DNA of 64,000 bases, taken from the IMG/VR virus record IMGVR_UViG_3300027573_000779, positions 1 to 64,000 of that record, one strand, 5' to 3'. Positions 2,905 to 59,916 of the stretch are shown here, in pieces (position 1 is the stretch's first letter; every line of letters begins with the position of its first letter). The notes under the pieces were generated by a model. That model ran no database searches and was not told the origin of the DNA. It worked only from the letters and a program-made list of their open reading frames with translations. The position numbers were made by a program, and so were the translations under genes.

Positions 2905-2981
2905 TGGTACTCCCGTTGGGACTTGCACCCAAATTTGTCTACTTAGAAGGTAGATGCCTCATCTATTTCGGCCACAGGAGC
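2905..2981 (-). tRNA. tRNA-Arg(UCU) with non-canonical elbow (A18, G55)
   Basis: GCTCCTG/CGGGAGT acceptor, TCTAC-CTTCTAA-GTAGA anticodon arm, TTGGG-TGCAAGT-CCCAA T arm, encoded CCA, A20. Confidence 0.92.
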
Positions 2982-6271: not shown

Positions 6272-6742
6272 CTAACTACCTACTCTCTCATTCGTCCCAT
6301 CCCAAACAAACTCTCCATCTTCGCCGACAAGTAGATGTTTGCCACACCCACAACAATAAGTCAGTCCATAGAACTTTGGATTTCTACTATAAGTTTCGGC
6401 TATGGCTTGACCCATATAAGTTATCGCCCCACAGCCTTTGCCTATTTTATTTAACTCTTCCTGTGTCCAGAACTTACCTAGGGCGGCAGTATTCGGCGGA
6501 TACTCCTCATACTTAGCATAACCAAACTCATCATATAACTCATGCTCCTTAGCAGTAAGGTCGCGTAAGGGATACTTCGGGCCAGCGATGCCTACGTGTT
6601 TGTAGCTCGTCCTGACTGGTCGCACGAACCCTTTAGCCTTCTCTTCTTCAGAGAGTACTAAATATACCTCGCACGGAGGAACGGATTGTTTATCTTCTCC
6701 ACCGCGACAAATGCGCGGGTCATTAGGGTCTGTAGTTAGCAT
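6272..6742 (-). CDS. Conserved-type phage hypothetical protein with Cys cluster (putative Zn-binding)
   Basis: HVG...CG...TYCCGCGKHL Cys motifs. Confidence 0.65.
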   Translation of the reverse strand: MLTTDPNDPRICRGGEDKQSVPPCEVYLVLSEEEKAKGFVRPVRTSYKHVGIAGPKYPLRDLTAKEHELYDEFGYAKYEEYPPNTAALGKFWTQEELNKIGKGCGAITYMGQAIAETYSRNPKFYGLTYCCGCGKHLLVGEDGEFVWDGTNERVGS

Positions 6743-6917: not shown

Positions 6918-7607
6918 TTAGACAGACGCTGGAATCAATTGTGACTTTGCTGATTTTTGTCTATAATAAAACTCGCGACGGAATTGCCGTTGTTTTTCCA
7001 TCCACTGCGGGTTGGAGCTTAGTCTATGATACTTAGCATATCTTCTGCATTGTGTTCGGCAAAATCTCTTACGTCTATCAGACGAACTAAATGGCCTCTC
7101 ACACCAATCGCAATGCCGATAATCTGCAACAGCCGTCCGCACAGTCTTTCTTCGCCTTTGAACGTTTGCAACGCGATACAACCGCTTACATTCGTTGCTG
7201 CAAGTTTTCCGCCGATGCCCGCCGCCCGCCGATGAGAACTCAAATATCTCATGACAGATAAGACATTCCCGCATCAAAGTCTTGTGTGGTTTAGCGCGTG
7301 GAAAAGGCTTTACTATTCTCTTTAATGCAGCAGAGTAAAGCGTATTAACCTGCTTCCACTTTTCGGGGTCTCCACCGTTAGCTTCATGATACCGCGTGGC
7401 TAAGACTTTCCATCGCCGCTTAACCAAATCCAGTAAGGTTTGTTCTTCGCCGGTCCAAGCGCCCAAAATATGTCTTACGCCGGGACGATATCGCATCTCA
7501 GCATCGCTAATACCTAAAGCGTGAAGTCTCCAGCGCAGGCCGCGTGCTCGCTGACCACTCCAGTTGCGCTTGGTGGGCGGCGCTTGAGTTATGATTAACT
7601 CAGACAT
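6918..7607 (-). CDS. Degenerate J-domain-like segment plus two CxxC...CxxxC zinc-finger repeats
   Basis: RWKVLATRYHEANGGDPEKWKQVN resembles J-domain helices II-III with HPD changed to HEA; CLICHE/CSNEC and CDWCE/CRTQC. Confidence 0.55.
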   Translation of the reverse strand: MSELIITQAPPTKRNWSGQRARGLRWRLHALGISDAEMRYRPGVRHILGAWTGEEQTLLDLVKRRWKVLATRYHEANGGDPEKWKQVNTLYSAALKRIVKPFPRAKPHKTLMRECLICHEIFEFSSAGGGHRRKTCSNECKRLYRVANVQRRRKTVRTAVADYRHCDWCERPFSSSDRRKRFCRTQCRRYAKYHRLSSNPQWMEKQRQFRREFYYRQKSAKSQLIPASV

Positions 7608-7990
7608 TACTTTCTTTTAAGAGATTCGGCTTCTGCGTGAACTTTTGTATCATTAGAATCAACTAAAAGGGTTGGAGCGTCTTTAAATTTTTTTCGATAG
7701 GCGGCACAGTTTAAAAAACCTTCATATTCTGCTCTAGTACTTCTTTCGTCGTCCCAATAAGGTATTAGTGTCCAATAAGGCTCAAACCCCATATGATACC
7801 AATACATAGGAATAATTTTAAACCAATACCGACGAATACAATACTGGTCGCCTTTTCTAAGGAGTTGAATGTTTGATGTCATTCTTTCACCAATGTAATA
7901 AAACACAGCAATTAAAAACACACTTACAAATACAGTCATTACAACAAAAAACACAAGTAATACGGGTAAAATTTGAATCATTTCGCACAT
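7607..7990 (-). CDS. Hypothetical membrane protein
   Basis: N-terminal TM helix. Confidence 0.55.
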   Translation of the reverse strand: MCEMIQILPVLLVFFVVMTVFVSVFLIAVFYYIGERMTSNIQLLRKGDQYCIRRYWFKIIPMYWYHMGFEPYWTLIPYWDDERSTRAEYEGFLNCAAYRKKFKDAPTLLVDSNDTKVHAEAESLKRK

Positions 7991-8181
7991 CCAAGAACGC
8001 TCGTAGCTTTAGGTAAAAACTTGTCTTGGATAAAATTTAAAATTTCAACGCCCTGCTCCCAAGTTATAGCGCAGGGCTTTCTTGGCACGATTCGGTCAAG
8101 TCCAGTAATTAGCTCCCGCAACTCCTTAACTTCCGCCTGAAGTTGTTCTATCTTCTCGTAAAGGTCATTTGTATCTGTCAT
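7978..8181 (-). CDS. Small hypothetical coiled-coil protein
   Basis: ORF track; heptad-like N-terminus. Confidence 0.5.
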   Translation of the reverse strand: MTDTNDLYEKIEQLQAEVKELRELITGLDRIVPRKPCAITWEQGVEILNFIQDKFLPKATSVLGCAK

Positions 8182-8186
8182 GTTGT

Positions 8187-8411
8187 TTATATAGGATTCA
8201 ACTTCTGCCTAACTTTTTCTTTTTTCTTTTCTTCTTTGTCTAGAGAAAGGAATTTAAACTTTGAATACCTATTTGTAATCAAAGAACCTAAAGTATTATA
8301 AAACTCTTTGGCACACTTTCGAGAACAAAGCCCACGGTTGTCTTCCTGCCCCTTTTTTGTCTGAAATCTTAATGGAACCTTTTTGGTGCAACCTAAATTC
8401 ATGCATTTCAT
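8187..8411 (-). CDS. Small Cys-rich hypothetical protein
   Basis: CMNLGC...CSRKC. Confidence 0.5.
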   Translation of the reverse strand: MKCMNLGCTKKVPLRFQTKKGQEDNRGLCSRKCAKEFYNTLGSLITNRYSKFKFLSLDKEEKKKEKVRQKLNPI

Positions 8412-9779: not shown

Positions 9780-9936
9780 TGATGGATGTAATCAGATTCG
9801 AACTGATACCACGCCCTTATTAGGCGTTAAAGCTATTTCATCAATCTGCTACTAGGCTTACAGAGGATATCATGGTCTGCTCTCCACAAACTAACTACTT
9901 TAATCTTTACGATTGCTACCGTTACAACATACACCC
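9780..9936 (-). ncRNA. 157-nt tRNA-like RNA with alanine identity (G3.U70, A73) and a ~90-nt insert replacing the anticodon arm
   Basis: GGGTGTA/TACATCC acceptor, TTGT-AACGGTA-GCAA D arm, ATCAG-TTCGAAT-CTGAT T arm, 3' ATCA. Confidence 0.75.
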
Positions 9937-9942
9937 ACAAAC

Positions 9943-12996: not shown

Positions 12997-13070
12997 TGGC
13001 AGGCACAGTTGGTTACGCTCCAACGCCCCATGGTCCAAAGCCACGTACGCTACTATTACGCCATGTGCCA
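12997..13070 (-). tRNA. tRNA-Gln(UUG) with A18, A54, G55, U58 and a U1.U72 mismatch
   Basis: TGGCACA/TGTGCCT acceptor, CGTGG-CTTTGGA-CCATG anticodon arm, GTTGG-AGCGTAA-CCAAC T arm, GCCA. Confidence 0.9.
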
Positions 13071-13597: not shown

Positions 13598-14656
13598 TTA
13601 ATCAGAATTCATGGGCGCAATCATCGAAAAAATCACCATCTTACAAAGCACCATAACTTGCTGTTTTGTGAGATTGTTCCCAGTAAGGTCAATTGTGACT
13701 TTAGAAGATGTTGTTGTGTCGCCTTTTAGAACATCTTTATACTTCATTGTGCCAACCAAGGCTGGAAGGGTAGTATCGGTTTCAAAAAAGTCAGATTCAT
13801 CACCTTCAGAAGCTGTAAAAACCGCGTTTTCTGATGGAGGAGGTTCGTTAACTCTGATATCAAACTGATATTCCCCTTCTCCTGTTACTTTTCGGTTGGG
13901 CGTTTCAACCCACCGAATATTCCCGCTCAAACGGTCAATCTTCACTGTGTTATTAACCACATATTGAACAGTAATATTGTTAAAGAACCATGAAAACTTG
14001 TCGTAATCATAGAGAGCTTCGCCATTGACAGTTACAGGCTGATACATTTGGATAGGGCCAGCCGCTATTACATGCTGGCGAAACTCCATTTTATCATATC
14101 TTTTTAAAGCCACTGTCATAATCTTTCCGCCAACTTTGCGCTTGATATTGACAGTTTCCCTTTTTAGAGTTTCCATCCAATTTGCAGGGCGAGCTAAGGG
14201 TTTTCCTACGGTAATACCAGCAAATTTGCTATCAAACCCCACCGCATTACCTCTAGGCAAAATACTCATTTGAACCGCGCCTGAATCATAGCGATAAGTC
14301 CCATCTTGGTCAATCCCAACCTTACCAAATATCCTGCCTACGTTAACTGATTGCGCCGGATTTTTAGGATTAACCACATCACAAGCTACATCAAATTCCA
14401 ATGATTTAGCTTGTTTTATTGTGCCACCTGTCCAGCCACCCATAATTAAAGGGGTGTCTTTTATGCTTCCTTTAAAAACCGCTGAATTGGACACATTAAT
14501 ATTCAAAGTATAAACATCTTTAATCCCTACTGCTTGGGGCGTTATTCGTGAGTTATACTGAATATCCATTTCGCCCTTAATGAAAGTCGGCGTATTGGTT
14601 TGTGCTACCACTTGGAACGCTAAAAATGCCAAGCAAGCACCCAGTTTTAGTTTCAT
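13598..14656 (-). CDS. Secreted/periplasmic beta-rich hypothetical protein
   Basis: Signal peptide MKLKLGACLAFLAFQVVA. Confidence 0.65.
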   Translation of the reverse strand: MKLKLGACLAFLAFQVVAQTNTPTFIKGEMDIQYNSRITPQAVGIKDVYTLNINVSNSAVFKGSIKDTPLIMGGWTGGTIKQAKSLEFDVACDVVNPKNPAQSVNVGRIFGKVGIDQDGTYRYDSGAVQMSILPRGNAVGFDSKFAGITVGKPLARPANWMETLKRETVNIKRKVGGKIMTVALKRYDKMEFRQHVIAAGPIQMYQPVTVNGEALYDYDKFSWFFNNITVQYVVNNTVKIDRLSGNIRWVETPNRKVTGEGEYQFDIRVNEPPPSENAVFTASEGDESDFFETDTTLPALVGTMKYKDVLKGDTTTSSKVTIDLTGNNLTKQQVMVLCKMVIFSMIAPMNSD

Positions 14657-14779
14657 CTATTGTGTTTCTTCTGTTTGAGTTGTGTTTTCTGTGTTTTGGT
14701 CGTTGTTCCCTGAAGTTACAACATAGAGAAGCAACAACACCCCAAAAATCAACACTGAAGCAATGATTTTAAACTTCAT
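14657..14779 (-). CDS. 40-aa single-TM protein absent from the ORF track (MKFKIIASVLIFGVLLLLYVVTSGNNDQNTENTTQTEETQ)
   Basis: Manual translation; the TAG stop directly abuts the ATG of the next gene. Confidence 0.6.
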   Translation of the reverse strand: MKFKIIASVLIFGVLLLLYVVTSGNNDQNTENTTQTEETQ

Positions 14780-14809
14780 AAAGCAATTCTATCAAGTTTT
14801 TTTAAAAAG

Positions 14810-15574
14810 TCAACCAGTGATTTTAGAGCGCGAAGTTGAAAGATTTTGTAAAGCCTCCTGTTCAGAAAGCCCTTTTAATTTTTCATCAAGAACGTTTTTG
14901 CTCCCTTTTTTGTTCTTATCGTCATCCAATAAGGCTATTTCAAGGTCCGCAAACGATTGATTGAGTTTGATTTGAACACTTTCTAGGGCAGTTTCAATAC
15001 AAATCTTATCAAAAGTGTCCCCTTCAATTTCTCCTGCCGCTTCGTTCATAGCCGCCGCCGCACAAGCCATCTTCCATTTCTTTTCTGTGCGTTTGATTGT
15101 CTCCGCAAAGTCCTGAAGAGTTACTTGGGCATCCTGATACACCCCTTGCCGATGTTCAAGCAATTGTCTCATTTTGGCCAACCGTTCTTTATAAACATCA
15201 GCGTCTTCAAGCCCGTCCTTCACGTATTGTTTAACTTGGTCCGCAAAAGTTAAAACCTGTGCCGAAAACTTACTAATATTTTCTTTATATTGGGCGAGCG
15301 CGTCTTGTTTCTTTATATACTGATTTTGTAATGTTTCAACGGGGTTTTTAGCGGACTCAGCTTTTAAGGCTTTTATACGCCAGTTTGCCATCTTCATTGC
15401 AAAGTATGGCAGAAAATTGATAATTCCCCAAGATATCCCGCCAGCAACCAAAAGACCAAATAATCCTTGAATGCTTAAAAAAACAAATGGAGCTACAAAA
15501 ACTCCTAGCACCCCAAGACCAATTACCTTCACTAATAATTCTATCCGTTTTCGTTTTTGTTCTAGGTCAGTCAT
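14810..15574 (-). CDS. Two-TM protein with long coiled coil (PspA/IM30-like architecture)
   Basis: Two N-terminal TM helices followed by ~170 aa of heptad helix ending KKWKMACAAAAMNEAAG. Confidence 0.55.
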   Translation of the reverse strand: MTDLEQKRKRIELLVKVIGLGVLGVFVAPFVFLSIQGLFGLLVAGGISWGIINFLPYFAMKMANWRIKALKAESAKNPVETLQNQYIKKQDALAQYKENISKFSAQVLTFADQVKQYVKDGLEDADVYKERLAKMRQLLEHRQGVYQDAQVTLQDFAETIKRTEKKWKMACAAAAMNEAAGEIEGDTFDKICIETALESVQIKLNQSFADLEIALLDDDKNKKGSKNVLDEKLKGLSEQEALQNLSTSRSKITG

Positions 15575-15948
15575 ATGTTTTGTAAAGATTTATATTTAAG
15601 TCTAATCAGTTCATCTAACGCTTTGCTTTGAACAATGGTTCCAGTTTCCCATCTTTTAACGCTTGCTACGCCAACATGTAAAAAACGCGCAAATTCTATT
15701 TGGGATAAATCTAATGAATTTCGAATTGCCAAAATCTCTTTTCCTGTTAAGAGATTTTGTTTTAGTCTATAAGCATCTACCGTATTCTTTCTTAATTCGT
15801 CTGCTTGTTCAAAGGTCACAGTTTTATATCCACACATAGTACATTCTTCGGCAGACGTAACAACTTCAAACTTTTCCCCATGAAACTCTTGTAAAATTGG
15901 GGCCTTCACTGTTTTAAACTCAGTATTGTTACAATCTAAACATATCAT
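15571..15948 (-). CDS. MqsA-like antitoxin (zinc ribbon + XRE HTH)
   Basis: CLDC...HGEKFEV...CTMCG zinc ribbon; IRNSLDLSQIEFARFLHVGVASVKRWETG HTH. Confidence 0.8.
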   Translation of the reverse strand: MICLDCNNTEFKTVKAPILQEFHGEKFEVVTSAEECTMCGYKTVTFEQADELRKNTVDAYRLKQNLLTGKEILAIRNSLDLSQIEFARFLHVGVASVKRWETGTIVQSKALDELIRLKYKSLQNI

Positions 15949-15953
15949 AAAAT

Positions 15954-16045
15954 TGGCACGGAGTACAGGTAACGCTCCTGTATAACGGAATGATTACCGT
16001 ATGAGGGTTTGGAATCCTCTGCCTTACTTGTCGAGCCAACTCCGT
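15954..16045 (-). tRNA. tRNA with Trp anticodon (CCA) on a long-variable-arm (class II) body; A18, A54, G55, U58
   Basis: ACGGAGT/ACTCCGT acceptor, GAGGA-TTCCAAA-CCCTC anticodon arm, ACGG/CCGT variable arm, ACAGG-AGCGTTA-CCTGT T arm, GCCA. Confidence 0.85.
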
Positions 16046-16049
16046 GTTG

Positions 16050-16074
16050 GGGCGCACCATTGCAAGGTGCGCCC
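16050..16074. other. Perfect 9-bp GC-rich hairpin in the tRNA-Trp 5' leader
   Basis: GGGCGCACC-ATTGCAA-GGTGCGCCC. Confidence 0.6.
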
Positions 16075-16251
16075 TCAGCGCATCAGTTTTTAACTTAACT
16101 TATGATAAAAAGGTCTATAAAATACCTCTTATAGACAAGAGAACTATCAATTCACTCCCAATAGCAAGGATACCTTTTGAATGCCGAAAAAGGTTCTAAA
16201 CGTGTTGGATTTTTAATTTAAGGATAACGCACCCAACTAACCTAAATTAAC

Positions 16252-16497
16252 CTAAATTTTGGGTCTGCCGTAAACCGAAGGGCCTCCGGTGTCTTTTTGT
16301 TCAATTGCTAAAGACCCCTTGGAAACAAACTCTACTTGTTGTTCGTCAAAGAATTCAGCGCGAGCTAAAGTCCCGTCTTTTGCTAGTTTTTGTGGGGTAA
16401 TTCCAATATGAACACACCCATTAAGGTATTCTGTCCGACTGGAAAACACGCCCTTGAACCCGCTGATTTTATCCTTAACAATGTCACCTAGTTTCAT
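16252..16497 (-). CDS. Conserved-type phage hypothetical protein (start revised to MKLGDIVKD)
   Basis: KLGDIVKDKISGFKGV...RTEYLNGCV pattern; the longer upstream extension is low-complexity. Confidence 0.65.
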   Translation of the reverse strand: MKLGDIVKDKISGFKGVFSSRTEYLNGCVHIGITPQKLAKDGTLARAEFFDEQQVEFVSKGSLAIEQKDTGGPSVYGRPKI

Positions 16498-16625
16498 TTT
16501 GTTATTTGTTTTGTTTTTTTGTTTTGTCTGAAATTTACCCCAAAACACACCCTTAAAGCCCCGCATTTTCATTTGTTAGTTGTTTTTGCTCAAATTCGCC
16601 CCAAAAAAGCATAACAAGCCTTTTT

Positions 16626-16826
16626 GGGGGAAGACTCCTATTTACCTTACTCAACCCCTACTTCCGGCTCAGGGTCTTTCATCCGCCCTTCCCTGCTAGT
16701 CTTTCTATGTACGGGCAGAACACTAAGTATTTTAGTGAACTGTTGCGATACATCGCCTCACGGCTCGCTCCATCGTCATCCTACTCACACTCGGTAGAAG
16801 TATTTTCGTCGGATACTAGCAACCTC
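16626..16826 (-). ncRNA. Unnamed ~200-nt structured RNA with possible pseudoknot
   Basis: TGCTAGT/ACTAGCA, TTCTAC/GTAGGA, GCC-GTGA-GGC, CACTAA/TTAGTG, TCTGCCC/GGGCGGA, GGGAAG/CTTCCC; no ORF. Confidence 0.6.
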
Positions 16827-16835
16827 AATAGGATA

Positions 16836-17063
16836 TCAAACTTGTTTGTTTAAATTTTTAATAATAGCTCGAACAAGTCTAGGTTCCGCACGAACATATT
16901 GACAAGCCAAACATTCACAGGTCCAATCTTTTTTCTTGTGAAAAGCGTCAATAACATGCATTGTGCCAAGTACGTCTAAACCTACGTTACGAACTTTAGA
17001 TAAAGCTAGTTCTTCTTGTTGTTCTGGTGTCATAAAAAATGGAGCCAAAGATAGGATTTGCAC
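16836..17063 (-). CDS. Hypothetical protein
   Basis: ORF track; CECLAC motif; start may be at the internal MTPEQ. Confidence 0.55.
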   Translation of the reverse strand: MQILSLAPFFMTPEQQEELALSKVRNVGLDVLGTMHVIDAFHKKKDWTCECLACQYVRAEPRLVRAIIKNLNKQV

Positions 17064-17123
17064 CTACAAATGAGAATTCACAAAATTCTTCCTGTTCTAG
17101 TTGAGGCACTTCGGCAATAAAAC

Positions 17124-17199
17124 TGGAACGGTAGACAAGATTCGCACTTGCGTAAAGGTTGGTTGGAAGCCAACTGCCTGACTTCTAGGCTACTACCGC
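17124..17199 (-). tRNA. tRNA-Gly(UCC) with A18 and G55
   Basis: GCGGTAG/CTACCGT acceptor, GTTGG-CTTCCAA-CCAAC anticodon arm, T loop TGCGAAT, U73-CCA. Confidence 0.92.
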
Positions 17200-17215
17200 A
17201 TTGAAAATTCAAAAA

Positions 17216-17299
17216 GGGGTCAGGATACCAATCTGCCTTATTTCATTCGACAGTGACCCTCAAGCTTTCTAAAGGGTCTTCCAACCGGAACCCTGACCC
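17216..17299 (-). ncRNA. Three-way-junction RNA, copy A
   Basis: GGGTCAGG/CCTGACCC; GACCC-TTTAGAAAGCTTGA-GGGTC; CTGTC-GAATGAAATAA-GGCAG. Confidence 0.7.
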
Positions 17300-17301
17300 G
17301 A

Positions 17302-17375
17302 AAAGGACATTAACTGTCTTATTTCATTCAACAGCACCCCTCAGTTTCCAAAGGGGTTCGTTACGAATGTCCTTT
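17302..17375 (-). ncRNA. Three-way-junction RNA, copy B
   Basis: AAAGGACAT/ATGTCCTTT; ACCCC-TTTGGAAACTGA-GGGGT; CTGTT-GAATGAAATAA-GACAG. Confidence 0.7.
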
Positions 17376-17499
17376 AAAATTGAAGAGGGGCAACCTAACG
17401 TCATCAGATAACCCCAATCACTAACGTTGCGTTAATGAGAAGTAAATTAAAACAACCTTGGGATTTCACGAGCGTTCCAATGTCTATCCAAGGTTTACT

Positions 17500-18287
17500 A
17501 AGTCTGAGACTACAACTTAGATTACTAGTCTTTCCGAAGATTATCAAGGCTTTGCGAGCCTCTTTCCTCCGTTATCCTCATAAACCCTTTAATGGCATCT
17601 ATGAACCTAGCATGGCTGCATTTTTACAGGTTGCATTTCCTGCTACCCATCACTCTACTCGATGTTCACTTTCTGTCTAGCTTGCGGCCAGTTAAGGATT
17701 ATTAGTCCAACATGCAGCGAAACAATCAACTAAATCACCCCTTGCGAGGGCAATCCAGTCTCCATTACCTTGCGGCAGGAGAATTAAGCCACTTTCGAGT
17801 GACAGAGGAAACGTCTTTGCTTTTTATATCATAGAACGATATGTTGGGATTACACCAACGCATCTAACAGCGACGTGCGTTTCCTGTCGTTTCATATCCT
17901 TTTGGGATACAAAATGCGACACGCCGCTTGCCTTTCATCTTGCAGACTACTCAACCAGATTACTCGACTTTGGATAACTTTTTAAGGGTTATCCATTACC
18001 GTTTAACCTTGCTATTAAGCCCTTGCTTGCATGGCTTGAACTTAATAACTCCTCTTTGTCCTTAGCTGTCGCTGTTTGGCATGATAATATATTAGATTGC
18101 GAGTCTAATACCCCTACTCACCGATTGGCTCTGTAGGTTTAACTATCCAGCTTCCAGTTACCTCACGTTATCGTAAGGTCTCAGGACTGAGTTTGCCTGA
18201 ATATCCCTTTGGAAAGGGCGCGAGGTTAGTTAGCACCTTCGCCTTTCGCCGTCTTGCGACGGGTTATTTAACGTGGTCAGGCCCACA
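17500..18287 (-). ncRNA. GOLLD-like giant ornate ncRNA (~790 nt)
   Basis: ORF-free, many GNRA-capped hairpins (GTC-GCAA-GAC, CCCTC-GCAA-GGGG, CACTC-GAAA-GTG), 5' loop GCCTGA complementary to TCAGGC, 3' GAGTAG...GATAATC...GAAAGACTAG...GTAGTCTCAG as recalled for GOLLD; located within a tRNA cluster. Confidence 0.7.
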
Positions 18288-18305
18288 AAATCTACAAATT
18301 AAAAT

Positions 18306-18410
18306 ACCTAAGTTCAGGTCGCTCAATATACGGTATGACCGATTGAAACAGTTAGCTATGCTGCTCCAAGTTGCCGGAATGACCCGATTTTATGCCCTCA
18401 ACGCTTAGGT
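18306..18410 (-). ncRNA. Closed ~105-nt structured domain directly 3' of tRNA-Leu
   Basis: ACCTAAG/CTTAGGT closing stem, TTCCGG-CAAC-TTGGAG hairpin; starts 3 nt after the CCA. Confidence 0.4.
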
Positions 18411-18413
18411 AAA

Positions 18414-18490
18414 TGGTCCCTCTGGCCGTGGTTGCAACGGCACTGTCAAGCTTTTAAGGCTCGCGTCTCCTGCTCTTGGACTACAGAGGG
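18414..18490 (-). tRNA. tRNA-Leu(UAA) lacking the long variable arm; A18, G55
   Basis: CCCTCTG/CAGAGGG acceptor, CGAGC-CTTAAAA-GCTTG anticodon arm, 5-nt variable loop, GCCGT-TGCAACC-ACGGC T arm, ACCA. Confidence 0.87.
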
Positions 18491-18495
18491 TAAAA

Positions 18496-18570
18496 TGGTG
18501 CGGAAAGGGAGAAGTCGCACTCCCACCTTAAACTTGGCAAGTTCACGTTCTACTACTAAACTACTTCCGC
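18496..18570 (-). tRNA. tRNA-Gly(GCC) with A18, G55, an 8-nt T loop and A73
   Basis: GCGGAAG/TTTCCGC acceptor, TGAAC-TTGCCAA-GTTTA anticodon arm, GGGAG-TGCGACTT-CTCCC T arm. Confidence 0.87.
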
Positions 18571-19100
18571 ATTTTTAAGGCTTGTCTCGCATTTTTAATC
18601 TCTTCTTCAAAATTTTTAATCTCTTCTTCTAAATCCTCAAACTCTTGATGTGCTAAGATATGACATTTCCTGCAAAGAGTCTTTAAATCTTTAACGGTTG
18701 TATCGTAAAGGTTCCTATAAACCAAATGGTGGGGTTCAACCCTAGAAGGAGACCCGCATTTTTCACAAACCGGATTGAGCTTTAACTTCTCTCTTCTCAA
18801 AGCGAACCAATGTTCCGATTTCAGATACTCGGTTCTATAGTATTCCCTTTTATCATTAACGGGATGTTCCCCACGGATTGGGGTATCGTGATAAACGCCC
18901 AGTGAGCGAGGAATCTTAAACTTAGATTTCAGCCTTCTGTTTATCTTCTTGTTGAAGATTCTCATCCCTTCCCAATCAAACCCTCTCTTCTTTTTTCGTT
19001 TTATAACGCCTTTAGGTAACATAAAGTAATGGGATTTTTTCCCTACCTCCGTTGGTAGCACCAATGTCTCCATTGATACCGGCGTCTCCGAACTTCCCAC
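18561..19100 (-). CDS. HNH endonuclease (true start likely MLPKG at ~19022)
   Basis: CEKCG...EPHHLVY...DLKTLCRKCHILAH. Confidence 0.85.
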   Translation of the reverse strand: MGSSETPVSMETLVLPTEVGKKSHYFMLPKGVIKRKKKRGFDWEGMRIFNKKINRRLKSKFKIPRSLGVYHDTPIRGEHPVNDKREYYRTEYLKSEHWFALRREKLKLNPVCEKCGSPSRVEPHHLVYRNLYDTTVKDLKTLCRKCHILAHQEFEDLEEEIKNFEEEIKNARQALKMRK

Positions 19101-19413: not shown

Positions 19414-19911
19414 TTACAATTCTTTGCCATCCAACCCCACAAGAGTTGAAACCCTCTTCCAACCATACGTTTTCATCTGTTCTTCATTCATGGTGTCAAG
19501 GCTGGCTTCGGGACTAATCACAAAAATGGAAATATTCTTCTCTCGTATGGTTTTTAGATATTTTTTGACAATAATTTCAAGAGAATAAGCTGATTGTTGA
19601 GCGTATTGAGGGTCGATTCTAAGAACGACCAAGCTGTTAGGTTCAATCTCATCTATCTTGATTATCTTATCTAACTTTAGACCAATTTCAACGTCTGTCT
19701 CTTGTTTAAGCCAACGAATAAATTTATCTTGAACATCCTGTGAGACCCCTTGCCCCTTCATTAATTCTTCGACAGAAGCATATCTTCTCCCGGTAGGTTT
19801 AATTTCTTCTGGATTTTTTAAAGGATGATTATCGTTCAGAGGATTTTCACATCCTACATCGTCATCTTCTGTTGTTCGGCCCATATAAATTCTTTCTTTA
19901 TTATGCTGCAA
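19414..19911 (-). CDS. Hypothetical protein
   Basis: ORF track; follows the PurA-like gene. Confidence 0.6.
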   Translation of the reverse strand: MQHNKERIYMGRTTEDDDVGCENPLNDNHPLKNPEEIKPTGRRYASVEELMKGQGVSQDVQDKFIRWLKQETDVEIGLKLDKIIKIDEIEPNSLVVLRIDPQYAQQSAYSLEIIVKKYLKTIREKNISIFVISPEASLDTMNEEQMKTYGWKRVSTLVGLDGKEL

Positions 19912-21241
19912 CCATCTCTTTTTTCAAGTTTAAAAAAGACATCTTATCGTTTGCCATTTCCCCATAAGATTTAATACCTATAGGGACATTTAACATATCA
20001 GTAAGAATATTAGGAATTGCTTCCCCTTCTACTTTTTCCGATTCACAATTAACTTTACCGAGAGTTTTACCTAGTTCTTCCTGATTAACTAAAAATGACA
20101 TATGGGGTTTTTTAAGTTCCCAAAGTTTTCCATTTAAATTATAGCCAGTGTTAATATACCATGGATTGATTTCATTAATTCTATCACAATGAGAAACCGC
20201 CAAATAATCTACCCCACCGTTAACTTCTAGGGCATATTTTAAAAGGGGAATATCTAACATGCCCGTTCTAAATCTTCCTTGCCATGGACCAGTTGTATTA
20301 GCTGTGTCTTGTAAATTCCAAGGCATTTCAGTTGGAAAAGGTCCTGCGCCGTGTCTGGTGGCATAAATTCTAGTTACACCAATCTCAACAATGTTAGATT
20401 CTAATAACCCCAAGCCAGCTTCATTTAAAACCTTATATACGTTTTCTGTGGTTGTATTACTCCAAGTTGTGTGGGGGTGAAAACCCCATTTTTCATCTAG
20501 TAATATGCCTTGAGCGCCCTCAAAAACAGGATTATTGGAACCTTTTAGCAATTCTGAAACCTGTTGAGCGTCTATGATGTTAATTTTTTTGCTTAATTCC
20601 TGATATTCTTTAGCTATACGGTCAGTAAAACGCAAATCTCTGAAAAACTTAGCATGAGAACCTATAAAATTATAGAAATCAACCCCTTCCCTGTCTAGGC
20701 GCGAAATCATCGCCCTAAAGGTAAGCCAAAGCTTTTCATGGGTAATATCATAATTCTTAAGGTCTTTAACCCGTAAAACATTATCTCTCTTTAAACTGTC
20801 TAAAACTGTTTCTCCAATCCCCACTCCACACGAGCCATGACGATTATTGTTTCTACTCTCTTCTAACATCCTGTTAGCCGCAACATGAAATGGGGTAGTA
20901 ACCAAAGCTCGTTCATCTACATAAATTGATTCAAAGTTTCCCCCTTTGCGCCAAGTATTTGCACTTAAAACCTCTTCTTCTTTTATTAAGGATAAGGGGT
21001 TAAATAAAACGTGCTTAGTGAGTAATGTTTTAACGTTCCGATTGACTAAAGTTCCACTGCCAAACTGAGCAAAAACGTGAGAGTCGCCACTTGAAGTAAC
21101 AACTCTGTGGGCACATTGAGCGCCGCCATTATATCTGATAACTAAATCAGAATTGTTTTGACGGACAAGAAAGTCAACAACACTTCCTTTTGTTTCGTCG
21201 CCGTGTTGCAGACCCACAACTATGAAAACATTTTTGTCCAT
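19901..21241 (-). CDS. Divergent adenylosuccinate synthetase-like protein (start revised to MDKNV)
   Basis: GDETKG, RYNGGAQCAH, FEGAQGILLD, TRHGAGPFPTE, GRFRTG. Confidence 0.9.
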   Translation of the reverse strand: MDKNVFIVVGLQHGDETKGSVVDFLVRQNNSDLVIRYNGGAQCAHRVVTSSGDSHVFAQFGSGTLVNRNVKTLLTKHVLFNPLSLIKEEEVLSANTWRKGGNFESIYVDERALVTTPFHVAANRMLEESRNNNRHGSCGVGIGETVLDSLKRDNVLRVKDLKNYDITHEKLWLTFRAMISRLDREGVDFYNFIGSHAKFFRDLRFTDRIAKEYQELSKKINIIDAQQVSELLKGSNNPVFEGAQGILLDEKWGFHPHTTWSNTTTENVYKVLNEAGLGLLESNIVEIGVTRIYATRHGAGPFPTEMPWNLQDTANTTGPWQGRFRTGMLDIPLLKYALEVNGGVDYLAVSHCDRINEINPWYINTGYNLNGKLWELKKPHMSFLVNQEELGKTLGKVNCESEKVEGEAIPNILTDMLNVPIGIKSYGEMANDKMSFLNLKKEMVAA

Positions 21242-21310
21242 AAATTTGAAAAAAAGGGAGAGGAAAGGCAACCATAACCATTCCTCTCCCGGTGTGCGAA
21301 CCCGAACCAA

Positions 21311-57694: not shown

Positions 57695-58709
57695 TGACGA
57701 TGAGCGCCAGTATACAGACCCAACGTATGCTGTCAACCATGGTCCATTTTCAGAAATATCTATACAGTTAAATAAAGCTTTAAAGAAACTAGACGCTTTT
57801 GCGCCGCCAAACTTAGCTGATTGGGTTGGATATAATACAAGTTTAAATTTAAAATTCCAATATCCAAACAAACAAAGTTTTATTATTACAGTGTGGGAGT
57901 GTAGCGCTATTCCTAATCTTTTAGTCTCAATGGCTAGAGATACAAGAATTTTTGGTCTTTCTCAACAAATAACCGAACTTTGGGATAAATACGGAATTAA
58001 TGCCCCTACTGTTTATCCCGGCTGTGATACAGATTTTTGGAAGCCGGTTTGTGAAAAAAACCCCACTTTTACTTTTCTTCATATCAATAGTTCAAACGTC
58101 CGTTCGGGGTTAGATTTAACAATTCAGGCTTTTCATAAGGTGTTTAAAAATTACCCTTATGTTCAATTAGTTATTAAAGACACCAACGATTCTCCACAGC
58201 TTTGCAATAAGATTCGAAAATACATAGATGAAGGCTCACAAATTTTTTACTATTCAAAAAGAATCAGTTATGAGGAAATTCGAAGGCTATACTCTTCTTC
58301 TCACGTTTGTCTAAATCTCTTAAGAAGCACTTCATTTGGCTTACCCCTTCTTGAATGTTCAGCTTGCGGTTGTCTTTGTGTTACAGGAGATACCAAACCC
58401 ACCAATGAAATTATAAAACCAGAATATGGAGTTTTAGTGCCGCCATCTGACGAAGTGGGGCTTGAAGGAATGGCGTCTTATTTAAGTCAGGAGTGGGGTC
58501 TTAGGAACTGCTATCCTGCGCTTCAATACAATGAAACTCCTAAGTTTTGGGACTTTAGTGTTGAAGAATACGCTAAAACATTGGAAAAAATATACTCCAA
58601 TTGGGATACTACTTACAGCAAAATAGACACCAGAACACCCATAGTTGAAAATTGGACTTGGGAAAAAAGCGCAAAAACTTTAATAAATCTTTTAGAAAAT
58701 GGAATATAG
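57675..58709 (+). CDS. GT4-like glycosyltransferase
   Basis: RSGLD, FGLPLLECSACG. Confidence 0.8.
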   Translation: MKIHMFDDDERQYTDPTYAVNHGPFSEISIQLNKALKKLDAFAPPNLADWVGYNTSLNLKFQYPNKQSFIITVWECSAIPNLLVSMARDTRIFGLSQQITELWDKYGINAPTVYPGCDTDFWKPVCEKNPTFTFLHINSSNVRSGLDLTIQAFHKVFKNYPYVQLVIKDTNDSPQLCNKIRKYIDEGSQIFYYSKRISYEEIRRLYSSSHVCLNLLRSTSFGLPLLECSACGCLCVTGDTKPTNEIIKPEYGVLVPPSDEVGLEGMASYLSQEWGLRNCYPALQYNETPKFWDFSVEEYAKTLEKIYSNWDTTYSKIDTRTPIVENWTWEKSAKTLINLLENGI

Positions 58710-59916
58710 TTGGCCTTTAAATACACCACAATTCAGCTTACTAGACAAACTTAAAATAGCGAAGTTCGTTTTAACTGATTCTCGTTGGACACAAGGAAAG
58801 AAAGTTCAGGAATTTGAACAAAAAATGGCAGAATATGTAGGTTCACGTTATGCTATTTTTACTTCAAGCGGCTCTACTGCTAACACTTTGTTAGCAATGT
58901 ATTTAAGAGACCATTGTTCGCCAGAAAGAAACATAGTTGTTTTTCCTTCAACTACTTGGATTACTTCAGTTTCGCCTTTTATCCGAGAGGGGTTTACTCC
59001 TCGTTTTATTGATATCAATCTTGTTAATTTTTCAATGAATTTGACAGAACTGGAAGAATATTTAAAAAAGAACTCTTCTAAAGTGGCCTGTATTTTTATT
59101 ACGTCATTAATTGGGTTTGTGCCTAATATCCAAACCATTAAGGCAATGGCCAAACATTATAATGTAACAGTAATGATGGATAATTGTGAAAATACTTTAG
59201 GGTCTTTTGAAAACAAAAATGTTTCTTCCTTTTTTACTTCAACAACCAGTACATATTTTGGGCACCAATTACAAAGTGTTGAGGGCGGGTTTGTATTTAC
59301 TAACTCTCTAGAACAACATGATTACTTTTTAATGGCAAGGAATCACGGAATGGTGCGGAGTCTTCCAGAATGGCGACAAAAATTTTATACTAATGGAGAA
59401 GTAGATTCGCGCTTTGATTTCAAAATTTTAGGCAACAATTTTAGAAACTCGGACCTTAATGCCTATATTGGTTTACTTGATTTTGCTCGATTGGAAGAAT
59501 ACTCGCAAAAACGAAAATATCTTTATGAAACTTTTGTAAGTAATTCAAGTGAAAAGCTTTTAATTATGCCTTTTGATTTGTTTTCGTGCAAACATGTTCC
59601 TTTTTGCCTACCTGTTATTTTAAGTCCTAAAGCTACCAAATATGTCGATTTACTTCCTGAATTGGTTGTGGAACTTAAAAAGGCATGTGAAGAAACTGAA
59701 ATCGAAACAAGGCCAATAATATCAGGAAACCTGCTCCGACAAACGTGTTTTAAACAATTTGGTTTTAAACCTAAAGATTTTCCTATAAGCGAATACGTTC
59801 ACAAAAACGGTTTTTATGTTGGTCTTTATGCAAATTTGGAGCCTGAGAGAGTTAGGAATTTTGCTATTAAAGTAAGAACGTATTTAGAGCAACAATTAGG
59901 TATAGCAGAGAGTTAA
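58699..59916 (+). CDS. PLP-dependent DegT-family enzyme, ColD-like (His replaces the catalytic Lys)
   Basis: SSGSTAN, DNCE, STYFGHQLQSVEGG, RNHG. Confidence 0.85.
   Translation: MEYSWPLNTPQFSLLDKLKIAKFVLTDSRWTQGKKVQEFEQKMAEYVGSRYAIFTSSGSTANTLLAMYLRDHCSPERNIVVFPSTTWITSVSPFIREGFTPRFIDINLVNFSMNLTELEEYLKKNSSKVACIFITSLIGFVPNIQTIKAMAKHYNVTVMMDNCENTLGSFENKNVSSFFTSTTSTYFGHQLQSVEGGFVFTNSLEQHDYFLMARNHGMVRSLPEWRQKFYTNGEVDSRFDFKILGNNFRNSDLNAYIGLLDFARLEEYSQKRKYLYETFVSNSSEKLLIMPFDLFSCKHVPFCLPVILSPKATKYVDLLPELVVELKKACEETEIETRPIISGNLLRQTCFKQFGFKPKDFPISEYVHKNGFYVGLYANLEPERVRNFAIKVRTYLEQQLGIAES

What the first reader, a model, noticed from the sequence alone, without database searches (positions are those of the whole stretch)
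15954..16045. Trp-anticodon tRNA with a Ser-like long variable arm
Seen: CCA anticodon, G73, A1-U72 and a ~21-nt variable region with an ACGG/CCGT stem. Known: tRNA-Trp is normally class I, and SerRS reads the long arm plus G73 and ignores the anticodon. Inference: either an unusual tRNA-Trp or a missense tRNA that inserts Ser at UGG.
Basis: partly seen in the sequence, partly recalled or inferred. Interest (0 to 1): 0.7.

Follow-up and report, generated by a model that had tools for sequence, protein, structure and literature searches.

The report
Phage tryptophan tRNA with extra arm
This is a real transfer RNA gene of a 209-kb groundwater phage that reads the tryptophan codon but carries the long extra arm normally found only on serine, leucine and tyrosine tRNAs. 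Its other features say it most likely still carries tryptophan, so it is a rule-breaking tRNA shape rather than a recoding device.

Summary
On the minus strand, 16045 down to 15954, lies a 92-nt cloverleaf with anticodon CCA, A1-U72, G73, an encoded CCA end and a 21-nt variable region (4-bp ACGG/CCGU stem, 8-nt loop). Standard detectors narrowly miss it (Rfam tRNA 25.9 bits against a cut-off of 29; ARAGORN finds it only at 95% of its threshold). The cause is a non-canonical elbow (A18 and G55), which six of the phage's other seven tRNAs share.

Five orthologues in other phages prove the fold: 96% of cells pair and 15 of 24 pairs change on both sides. A1-U72 never varies. Three orthologues also have the long arm and two have a normal short loop.

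At least 31 other viral tRNA(CCA) genes with long arms and canonical elbows exist in IMG/VR. Nearly all have purine1-U72 and G73.

Serine tRNAs of phages have G1-C72 and G2-C71. This tRNA has C2-G71, a known antideterminant against E. coli SerRS. The phage's TGG codons align with conserved Trp.

Verdict: a class-II-shaped tRNA-Trp, most likely charged by the host's TrpRS. Serine missense is unlikely but untested. The role of the arm is unknown.

The parts
15954..16045 (-). Whole tRNA(CCA) gene, 92 nt including the encoded 3' CCA
   Evidence: Covariation with orthologues L290:3825-3916, L285:1737-1829, L299:3461-3549, L298:5281-5357 and L301:6875-6950.
16039..16045 (-). Acceptor stem, 5' strand (A1 at 16045)
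   Evidence: Seven standard pairs with 15958-15964. Six of the 7 pairs change on both sides among orthologues; A1-U72 is invariant 6/6.
16021..16036 (-). D arm: 3-bp stem (G10-C25, C11-G24, U12.G23) and 10-nt loop CGACAAGUAA, with A18 G19 in place of G18 G19
   Evidence: Nearly invariant in L285 and L290, which were found without using this arm.
16003..16019 (-). Anticodon arm: 4 pairs plus A31.C39, loop UUCCAAA
   Evidence: A31.C39 is kept in the three closest orthologues. L299 and L301 have a full 5-bp stem.
16010..16012 (-). Anticodon CCA (TGG on the + strand)
   Evidence: Identical in independent assemblies. CCA also in L298, L299 and L301, found by the D arm alone.
15982..16002 (-). Variable region, 21 nt: AU, stem ACGG (16000-15997), loop UAAUCAUU (15996-15989), stem CCGU (15988-15985), UAU
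   Evidence: Hairpin -4.0 kcal/mol, p = 0.02 against shuffles. Two of 4 stem pairs change on both sides among the four long-arm orthologues. The loop is identical in window, L290 and L285 although it was not part of the search pattern.
15965..15981 (-). T arm ACAGG-AGCGUUA-CCUGU, with A54 G55 C56 G57 U58 instead of U54 U55 C56 R57 A58
   Evidence: Three of 5 stem pairs covary. The phage's tRNA-Gln (12997-13070) has the same AGCGU loop start.
15954..15964 (-). Acceptor 3' strand (15964-15958), discriminator G73 (15957), encoded CCA (15956-15954)
   Evidence: All 8 tRNAs of the phage encode CCA. The discriminator is G in 4 of the six orthologues and C in 2.
16050..16074 (-). 9-bp G+C-rich hairpin, 4 nt upstream of the tRNA's 5' end; no U tract follows it on the minus strand
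   Evidence: Function not established; possibly a processing or stability element.
12997..13070 (-). tRNA-Gln(UUG) of the same phage, with the same AGCGU T loop and an AG D loop
   Evidence: Rfam 44.3 bits.
17040..17199 (-). tRNA-Thr(UGU) and tRNA-Gly(UCC), both with UGC T loops and AG D loops
18414..18570 (-). tRNA-Leu(UAA), 77 nt with only a 5-nt variable loop, and tRNA-Gly(GCC); both have G55
2905..2981 (-). tRNA-Arg(UCU) with T loop UGCAAGU

Best explanation
It is a functional, phage-encoded tRNA-Trp with a class-II shape.

Shown: a conserved cloverleaf with CCA anticodon, A1-U72, G73 in this gene, an encoded CCA end, and a structured extra arm. It belongs to a tRNA-Trp lineage whose members in sister phages occur both with and without the arm.

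Inferred mechanism:
1. It is transcribed on the minus strand with the surrounding genes.
2. RNase P and 3' trimming release it; no CCA addition is needed.
3. The host TrpRS charges it with tryptophan by reading C34 C35 A36, G73 and A1-U72. The phage encodes no TrpRS or SerRS.
4. It decodes UGG, which makes up 1.4% of phage codons.

The extra arm sits on the variable-loop side. Bacterial TrpRS lacks the C-terminal domain with which its relative TyrRS grips such an arm, so the arm should be tolerated. C2-G71 and the absence of G1-C72 and G2-C71 should keep SerRS away.

The arm and the A18/G55 elbow are most likely lineage traits that change how tRNA-binding proteins other than the synthetase see the molecule, for example tRNA-cleaving defence or competitor nucleases. 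This last step is speculation. The evidence for it is the conserved loop sequence and a clade-wide pattern.
For: Fold and orthology:
- 96.3% of cells paired, 15 of 24 pairs with changes on both sides, A1-U72 6/6; three-sequence version.
- The short-loop orthologues L298 and L301 share the D arm and acceptor bases 1-5.

Trp marks:
- Identity rules from PMC9976931.
- Class-I Trp tRNAs in related phages have A1-U72 and G73.
- Of 32 long-arm viral tRNA(CCA) sequences, 26 have R1-U72 and 30 have G73.

Anti-Ser marks:
- Ser tRNAs of phages: G1-C72 in 45/53, G2-C71 in 49/53.
- C2-G71 is a SerRS antideterminant in E. coli tRNA-Leu.

Coding and context:
- TGG aligns with W in 66% of 326 aligned positions; Ser is not among the six commonest partners.
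- Standard code, with TGA as stop in 38 of 191 ORFs.
- No phage TrpRS or SerRS.
- Same strand, same elbow signature and same encoded CCA as the phage's other tRNAs.
- In large viral tRNA arrays the long-arm form is the only Trp tRNA within the fetched stretch (L083, L084, L143).
- The neighbouring tRNA-Ala(UGC) of L285 and L290 also has a long arm yet keeps G3.U70 and A73.
Against: - There is no aminoacylation, expression or modification data; no RNA run was listed.
- The host is unknown, and the identity rules come from E. coli and B. subtilis.
- G73 plus a long arm are also the main Ser marks. The bodies of the canonical-elbow viral long-arm Trp tRNAs resemble Ser tRNAs most (55 of 160 top-5 neighbours against 8% of the pool), so residual serylation is conceivable.
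- Two orthologues (L285, L298) have C73, which is not a known bacterial Trp discriminator.
- A18/G55 breaks a nearly universal tertiary pair, so full translational competence is assumed, not shown.
- The anticodon and T-loop columns of L285 and L290, and the D arm of L297-L301, were fixed by the search patterns.
Confidence: 0.6

Rival explanations
1. Missense tRNA: SerRS charges it through the long arm and G73, so it inserts Ser at UGG.
For: Long arm, G73 and C11-G24 are present. SerRS ignores the anticodon, and arm size is its main determinant (PMC9976931). Viral long-arm Trp tRNA bodies are most similar to Ser tRNAs.
Against: - G1-C72 and G2-C71 are conserved in most bacterial Ser tRNAs and in 45-49 of 53 phage Ser tRNAs. 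Both are absent here, and C2-G71 is a SerRS antideterminant.
- The V stem has 4 bp against a mean of 5.0 in phage Ser tRNAs.
- A1-U72 is invariant, as expected for Trp.
- Short-loop orthologues exist.
- TGG codons sit at conserved Trp positions.
Confidence: 0.07
2. Ambiguous tRNA: charged mainly with Trp but partly with Ser, giving low-level statistical mistranslation during infection.
For: It carries marks of both systems: CCA, G73 and A1-U72 for Trp; long arm and G73 for Ser. A likely Ser-type ancestry of many viral long-arm Trp tRNAs implies that such intermediates once existed.
Against: The acceptor stem has moved away from the Ser pattern across the family: G2-C71 in only 12 of 32 and G1-C72 in 1 of 32. 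That looks like selection against serylation. No benefit is evident.
Confidence: 0.1
3. A tRNA-like RNA that is not used for decoding: a decoy or sponge for a tRNA-targeting host defence, or a regulatory or processing element.
For: The elbow is non-canonical (A18, G55, A54-U58). The 8-nt V loop is invariant in three orthologues while the stems around it change, which suggests sequence-specific recognition by some partner. The phage encodes an RNA ligase family protein (180126-180593, 75 bits), as phages that repair cleaved tRNAs do. Phage tRNAs are known to counter tRNA nucleases (PMC10264068, PMC11464382).
Against: Intact identity marks, an encoded CCA, a 7-nt anticodon loop with U33, and the same elbow in the phage's other tRNAs, whose anticodons match its commonest codons (TTA, CAA, GGA, AGA, ACA), all point to a working translation set. 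A decoy role and a decoding role are not exclusive.
Confidence: 0.13
4. tRNA-Trp with widened decoding: the weakened anticodon stem (A31.C39) lets CCA also read UGA, giving stop-codon read-through.
For: [quoted passage not shown] A31.C39 is conserved in the three closest orthologues.
Against: In those reports the open pair is at the top of the stem (27-43), not the bottom. TGA ends 38 of 191 ORFs and is followed by another in-frame stop at ordinary distances. L299 and L301 have full 5-bp stems.
Confidence: 0.05
5. Chance cloverleaf or decaying pseudogene.
For: It scores below the thresholds of both standard detectors.
Against: There is compensatory covariation in all four variable helices across six phages whose flanking proteins are only 25-54% identical. 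The loops are conserved, CCA is encoded, and the elbow is the lineage-specific one.
Confidence: 0.02

Closest known systems
Bacterial class-I tRNA-Trp(CCA)
   Same: Anticodon CCA, discriminator G73, A1-U72, 7/5 acceptor/T stems and a 7-nt anticodon loop with U33 and A37.
   Different: 21-nt variable arm instead of 4-5 nt. 3-bp class-II-type D stem. A18/G55 and A54-U58 instead of G18/U55 and U54-A58. U32 instead of C32. A31.C39 mismatch.
Bacterial tRNA-Ser (class II)
   Same: Long structured variable arm, G73, 3-bp D stem with C11-G24. Body similarity is weak.
   Different: A1-U72 and C2-G71 instead of G1-C72 and G2-C71. Shorter V stem with a large loop. The anticodon is not a Ser one.
Viral long-arm tRNA(CCA) with canonical elbows, found here (for example L062:587-678, L090:5488-5576, L048:5801-5889)
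   Same: CCA anticodon, purine1-U72, G73, 11-21-nt variable region that is usually a hairpin, class-II-type D arm, phage tRNA arrays that often lie near GOLLD or ROOL RNAs.
   Different: They have GG and UUCGAAU elbows, a CUCCAAA loop and mostly GNRA-capped V arms, and score 42-56 bits with Rfam. A model built from them scores this gene only 26.5 bits, so common origin is not shown.
allo-tRNAs and tRNA-Sec (Mukai et al. 2017, PMC5389517)
   Same: Long variable arm and G73 combined with a non-Ser anticodon.
   Different: Those have 8/4, 9/3 or 8/5 acceptor/T stems and Ser identity. This one is 7/5 with Trp-type acceptor marks.
nev-tRNAs of nematodes (PMC3333845)
   Same: A class-II body carrying an anticodon of a class-I amino acid.
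   Different: Those are eukaryotic and, by the paper's title, decode an alternative code for leucine, so anticodon and identity disagree. Here acceptor marks and anticodon agree.
Phage tRNAs altered to escape tRNA-cleaving defences (PMC10264068; T5 tRNA-Lys against PARIS, PMC11464382)
   Same: Phage tRNAs that keep their decoding identity while changing features recognised by other tRNA-binding proteins.
   Different: The known cases change the anticodon loop. Here the changes are in the elbow and the variable arm, and no nuclease has been linked to them.

Membership tests
tRNA (Rfam RF00005) | Cloverleaf of four helices supported by comparative evidence | tested here: met
   96.3% of cells paired and 15 of 24 pairs with changes on both sides in six orthologues.
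tRNA (Rfam RF00005) | Score at or above the curated gathering score (29 bits), or detection by ARAGORN at default settings | tested here: not met
   25.9 bits. ARAGORN finds it only at -ps95.
tRNA (Rfam RF00005) | Conserved elbow nucleotides G18, G19, U54, U55, C56, A58 | tested here: not met
   A18 G19 and A54 G55 C56 G57 U58; only G19 and C56 are kept. Six of the phage's other seven tRNAs share G55 and the AG D loop.
Bacterial tRNA-Trp identity | Anticodon C34 C35 A36 | tested here: met
   Also in L298, L299 and L301, found without using the anticodon.
Bacterial tRNA-Trp identity | Discriminator G73 | tested here: met
   G at 15957. G in 4 of 6 orthologues and C in L285 and L298.
Bacterial tRNA-Trp identity | A1-U72 first pair | tested here: met
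   Invariant in 6/6 while the other acceptor pairs covary.
Bacterial tRNA-Trp identity | Aminoacylation with Trp by TrpRS | not testable with these tools
   No biochemical or tRNA-sequencing data; no RNA run was listed.
Bacterial tRNA-Ser identity | Long variable arm of Ser-like size | tested here: inconclusive
   The 21-nt region is Ser-like in length, but the stem has 4 bp with an 8-nt loop. Phage Ser tRNAs have a mean of 5.0 bp and a median of 18 nt.
Bacterial tRNA-Ser identity | G1-C72 and G2-C71 | tested here: not met
   A1-U72 and C2-G71. Ser tRNAs of phages have 45/53 and 49/53. C2-G71 is a SerRS antideterminant.
Bacterial tRNA-Ser identity | Discriminator G73 | tested here: met
   shared with Trp identity.
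allo-tRNA / tRNA-Sec | 8/4, 9/3 or 8/5 acceptor/T-stem configuration | tested here: not met
   7/5 in this gene and in all orthologues.
   Model R1 gives 26.5 bits, below the phage's own tRNA-Gly at 35.8.

The most novel reading that the evidence does not exclude
This gene belongs to a clade of roughly 200-kb phages that has rebuilt its whole tRNA pool. Nearly every tRNA has an A18/G55 elbow, and several class-I tRNAs (Trp, Ala, a CAU tRNA) carry an extra arm. In the Trp lineage that arm has an invariant loop, UAAUCAUU.

On this reading these are deliberate marks that separate phage tRNAs from host tRNAs. They would make them blind to T-loop or elbow-directed nucleases and modification enzymes of the host, of rival elements, or of the phage itself. 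The arm could also serve as a handle for a dedicated partner.
Probability: 0.2. Interest if true: 0.85.

Novelty: new variant of a known kind. Interest (0 to 1): 0.62.

Why it matters
Textbooks assign long variable arms in bacteria only to Leu, Ser, Tyr and Sec tRNAs, and this gene breaks that rule. The session also shows that long-arm tRNA(CCA) genes are common in viral metagenomes: about 33 of the first 120 pattern matches in IMG/VR, against 1 of 120 in cellular genomes.

None of the six full-text searches turned up a description of this.

If these tRNAs are charged with Trp, they show that TrpRS, EF-Tu and the ribosome accept a class-II body and a G55 elbow. They would also be natural scaffolds for orthogonal tRNA design.

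Detection is affected too. This gene and its L285 and L290 orthologues fell below the standard thresholds, so phage tRNA counts are underestimates.

If the arm and elbow serve to evade tRNA-targeting defences, that would be a new axis of the phage-host conflict over tRNA.

Tried and rejected
Searches that found nothing:
- blastn of the locus against GenBank phages.
- Exact anticodon-arm 22-mer, and D arm plus anticodon loop, in IMG/VR.
- The MqsA-like neighbour as bait. The neighbour is also not conserved next to the orthologues, so the adjacency looks incidental.
- No RNA-seq run could be listed, and DNA runs showed no variants.
- Relatives cannot be drawn for a virus record.

Searches that gave no orthologue:
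- The 730-aa neighbour protein gave 35 related loci, none with an orthologue of this tRNA. They did give the first hint of long arms on Gln and Thr tRNAs.
- The family covariance model R1 did not separate this gene from other tRNAs.
- L025:9507-9603, a 97-nt element with a UGCAAGU loop, does not fold as a tRNA.

Readings rejected:
- Genome-wide recoding. Code 11 fits, with 92% coverage by stop-to-stop frames of 100 codons or more. TGG aligns with Trp. TGA is a normal stop.
- A dedicated phage TrpRS or SerRS.
- Host mimicry, which is unlikely: the same pattern in 596 Gb of cellular genomes gave only one long-arm tRNA(CCA) among 120 stretches, and that one looks 8/4 (L263).

Not done: complex prediction was not run, because it could not distinguish identity.

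Full report
**Where it is.** The window is the first 64 kb of a 208,933-bp IMG/VR virus record. It has 37% G+C, and standard code 11 fits it. The same sequence occurs in groundwater and freshwater-sediment metagenomes. Everything from 1 to about 36,300 is transcribed on the minus strand. That region holds seven tRNA genes, and an eighth lies at the other end of the record. It also holds a GOLLD RNA at 17501-17929 (194 bits).

**The observation.** The reported interval, read on the minus strand, is a 92-nt cloverleaf:
- Acceptor stem of 7 perfect pairs beginning with A1-U72, then G73 and an encoded CCA.
- U8, and a 3-bp D stem with a 10-nt loop.
- Anticodon stem of 4 pairs plus A31.C39, loop UUCCAAA, anticodon CCA at 16012-16010.
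- Variable region of 21 nt with an ACGG/CCGU stem and the loop UAAUCAUU.
- T arm with the loop AGCGUUA.

ARAGORN at default settings and Rfam at its gathering score both miss it. Rfam gives 25.9 bits against 29. ARAGORN reports it at 95% of threshold, where the whole genome gives only nine calls. The cloverleaf is within 0.7 kcal/mol of the predicted optimum, and the V hairpin is more stable than 98% of shuffles.

**Why detectors miss it, and why that supports it.** Six of the phage's other seven tRNAs (Arg, Gln, Thr, Gly, Leu, Gly) have G at position 55, with T loops UGCRA.. or AGCGU... They also have AG where G18 G19 should be. Only the initiator tRNA is canonical. The candidate has the same signature and shares the AGCGU loop start with tRNA-Gln. 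All eight tRNAs encode CCA. A random cloverleaf would not copy a lineage-specific elbow.

**Sequence reliability.** Contigs from four public runs lie on 14000-19000 with no differences. They include X3, from another sample and study, which covers 15984-16242. An anticodon error is therefore excluded.

**Orthologues.**
- A metagenome scan with the anticodon-loop and T-loop motifs found L290:3825-3916 and L285:1737-1829. Their flanking proteins are 25-54% identical to ours.
- An IMG/VR scan with the D arm alone found L299:3461-3549, which also has a long arm (ACGA/UCGU, loop UAAU). It also found L298:5281-5357 and L301:6875-6950, which have ordinary 5-nt variable loops. All three carry CCA and A1-U72.
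- On the six-sequence alignment A3, 96.3% of cells pair, against 27-44% with slid partners. Fifteen of 24 pairs change on both sides: 6 of 7 acceptor, 4 of 5 anticodon-stem, 2 of 4 V-stem and 3 of 5 T-stem pairs. A1-U72 never varies.
- In the three closest orthologues the V loop and the A31.C39 mismatch are identical, although neither was in the search pattern.

Two caveats apply. The columns covered by each search pattern are invariant by construction. L285 is a low-coverage contig.

**A wider class.** ARAGORN called about 33 of the 120 stretches as tRNA-Trp(CCA) of 82-92 nt with a long variable region.
- Nine that I checked score 42-56 bits with Rfam.
- Among 32 distinct long-arm sequences, including ours, 26 have purine1-U72, 30 have G73 and 31 have the loop CUCCAAA.
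- Twenty-one have V hairpins beyond the 95th percentile of shuffles, and 20 are GNRA-capped. Phage Ser and Leu arms are often GNRA-capped too.
- Their bodies resemble Ser tRNAs most. This suggests that many arose from Ser-type tRNAs, helped by the G73 that Ser and Trp identity share, followed by remodelling of the acceptor stem.
- The same pattern in cellular genomes gave one long-arm tRNA(CCA) in 120 stretches.
- In some large arrays the long-arm form is the only Trp tRNA within the fetched stretch; L048 has both forms.
- Long arms also occur on Gln, Thr, Lys, His, Cys, Asn, Ile and Gly tRNAs, and Leu tRNAs occur without arms.
- A covariance model of the canonical-elbow group does not score our gene above other tRNAs, so I do not claim common descent with that group.

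**Trp or Ser.** According to the 2023 review of tRNA identity (PMC9976931):
- Bacterial Trp identity rests on the anticodon, G73 and the first acceptor pair.
- Ser identity rests on the size of the extra arm, helped in E. coli by G73 and acceptor-stem pairs.
- G1-C72 and G2-C71 are conserved in most bacterial Ser tRNAs.
- C2-G71 of E. coli tRNA-Leu is an antideterminant against SerRS.

Our tRNA has the complete Trp set and carries C2-G71. Phage Ser tRNAs in the fetched loci have G1-C72 in 45 of 53 and G2-C71 in 49 of 53. Class-I Trp tRNAs of related phages have A1-U72 and G73.

In L285 and L290 the next gene is a tRNA-Ala(UGC) with a long arm and a G55 loop that still has G3.U70 and A73. Extra arms in this clade therefore ride on otherwise cognate identity sets.

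In the phage's proteins, TGG aligns with Trp at 66% of 326 aligned positions. Its common substitutes are Phe, Leu, Tyr and His, not Ser. TGA is an ordinary stop. The phage has no TrpRS or SerRS.

**Mechanism proposed.**
- Shown: a conserved, structured tRNA gene with Trp-type marks and an optional extra arm within one lineage.
- Inferred: charging by the host TrpRS and decoding of UGG.
- Speculative: the arm, with its conserved loop, and the A18/G55 elbow change recognition by proteins other than the synthetase, such as tRNA nucleases.

Phage tRNAs that escape such nucleases are documented for anticodon-loop changes (PMC10264068, PMC11464382). The phage also has an RNA ligase family gene.

**Limits.** There are no expression or charging data. 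The host is unknown. C73 in two orthologues is unexplained. The collection scans were truncated, so frequencies are lower bounds. None of the six literature searches turned up a description, but many journals are outside the library.

Noticed in passing
window 2905-2981, 12997-13070, 17040-17199, 18414-18570 (all minus); L298, L300, L301, L299, L290, L285: Seven of this phage's eight tRNAs have G55 (T loops UGCRA.. or AGCGU..) and A18 G19 instead of G18 G19. In related jumbo-phage contigs the same holds for whole arrays: 18 of 18 calls in L301 and 21 of 23 in L300, at a relaxed ARAGORN threshold. This looks like a clade-wide re-engineered tRNA elbow. None of my literature searches turned up a description.
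   Followed up: partly
window 18414-18490 (-): tRNA-Leu(UAA) of 77 nt with only a 5-nt variable loop, C1-G72 and A73, so a Leu anticodon sits on a class-I body. Rfam does not report it at its gathering score. Arm-less Leu tRNAs recur in other viral loci.
   Followed up: partly
window 9781-9937 (-): A 157-nt tRNA-like RNA in the gap between two ORFs. It has an 8-9-bp acceptor stem, a D-like hairpin with GG, a central arm of about 75 nt, a 6-bp V-like hairpin and a canonical UUCGAAU T arm. Rfam gives no hit at E up to 1.
   Followed up: partly
window 17501-17929 (-); L092:307-752; L084:12269-12780 and 7558-8229: A GOLLD RNA (194 bits) sits among the tRNA genes. GOLLD and ROOL RNAs also lie in two of the arrays that hold long-arm Trp tRNAs.
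   Followed up: no
L285:1836-1932 and L290:3925-4009; L300 near 6615-6705: tRNA-Ala(UGC) with G3.U70, A73, a long variable arm and a G55 T loop lies directly after the Trp orthologue in L285 and L290. In L300 a tRNA with the same D arm, a CAU anticodon and a GAAA-capped long arm is present.
   Followed up: partly
L003, L009, L010, L013, L036 (for example L013:7245-7332, L009:7652-7737): Related jumbo phages carry high-scoring tRNA-Gln(UUG) of 87-88 nt and tRNA-Thr(UGU) of 82-86 nt with long variable arms, canonical elbows and cognate acceptor marks. In the Thr V stem the third pair is G-C, A-U or C-G in L009, L013 and L036 respectively.
   Followed up: partly
window 15571-15948 (-): An MqsA-type antitoxin / HTH protein (Pfam E 3.4e-10) starts 5 nt after the tRNA's CCA with no evident Shine-Dalgarno sequence. 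This adjacency is not conserved in the orthologous loci.
   Followed up: partly
window 16050-16074: A 9-bp G+C-rich hairpin lies 4 nt upstream of the tRNA's 5' end. It is not a typical terminator on the minus strand.
   Followed up: no
window 19901-21310 (-): This ORF matches phrog_1211 (labelled 2-aminooxy adenylosuccinate synthetase, E 9e-78). From my own knowledge this looks like the PurZ type, so the phage may modify its adenine. An aminotransferase-like ORF lies at 58699-59916.
   Followed up: no
G000:C1:180126-180593 (-) and 115243-131649 (+), outside the window: An RNA ligase family domain (PF09414, 75 bits) and a single ORF of 5,468 aa.
   Followed up: no
L285:1737-1829 and L298:5281-5357: Two Trp orthologues have C73 instead of G73. 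No known bacterial Trp or Ser identity set uses C73.
   Followed up: no
L263:124-205 (cellular genome collection): The only long-arm tRNA(CCA) among 120 pattern matches in bacterial and archaeal genomes. ARAGORN draws it with an 8-bp acceptor stem and a 4-bp T stem, which is allo-tRNA-like.
   Followed up: no
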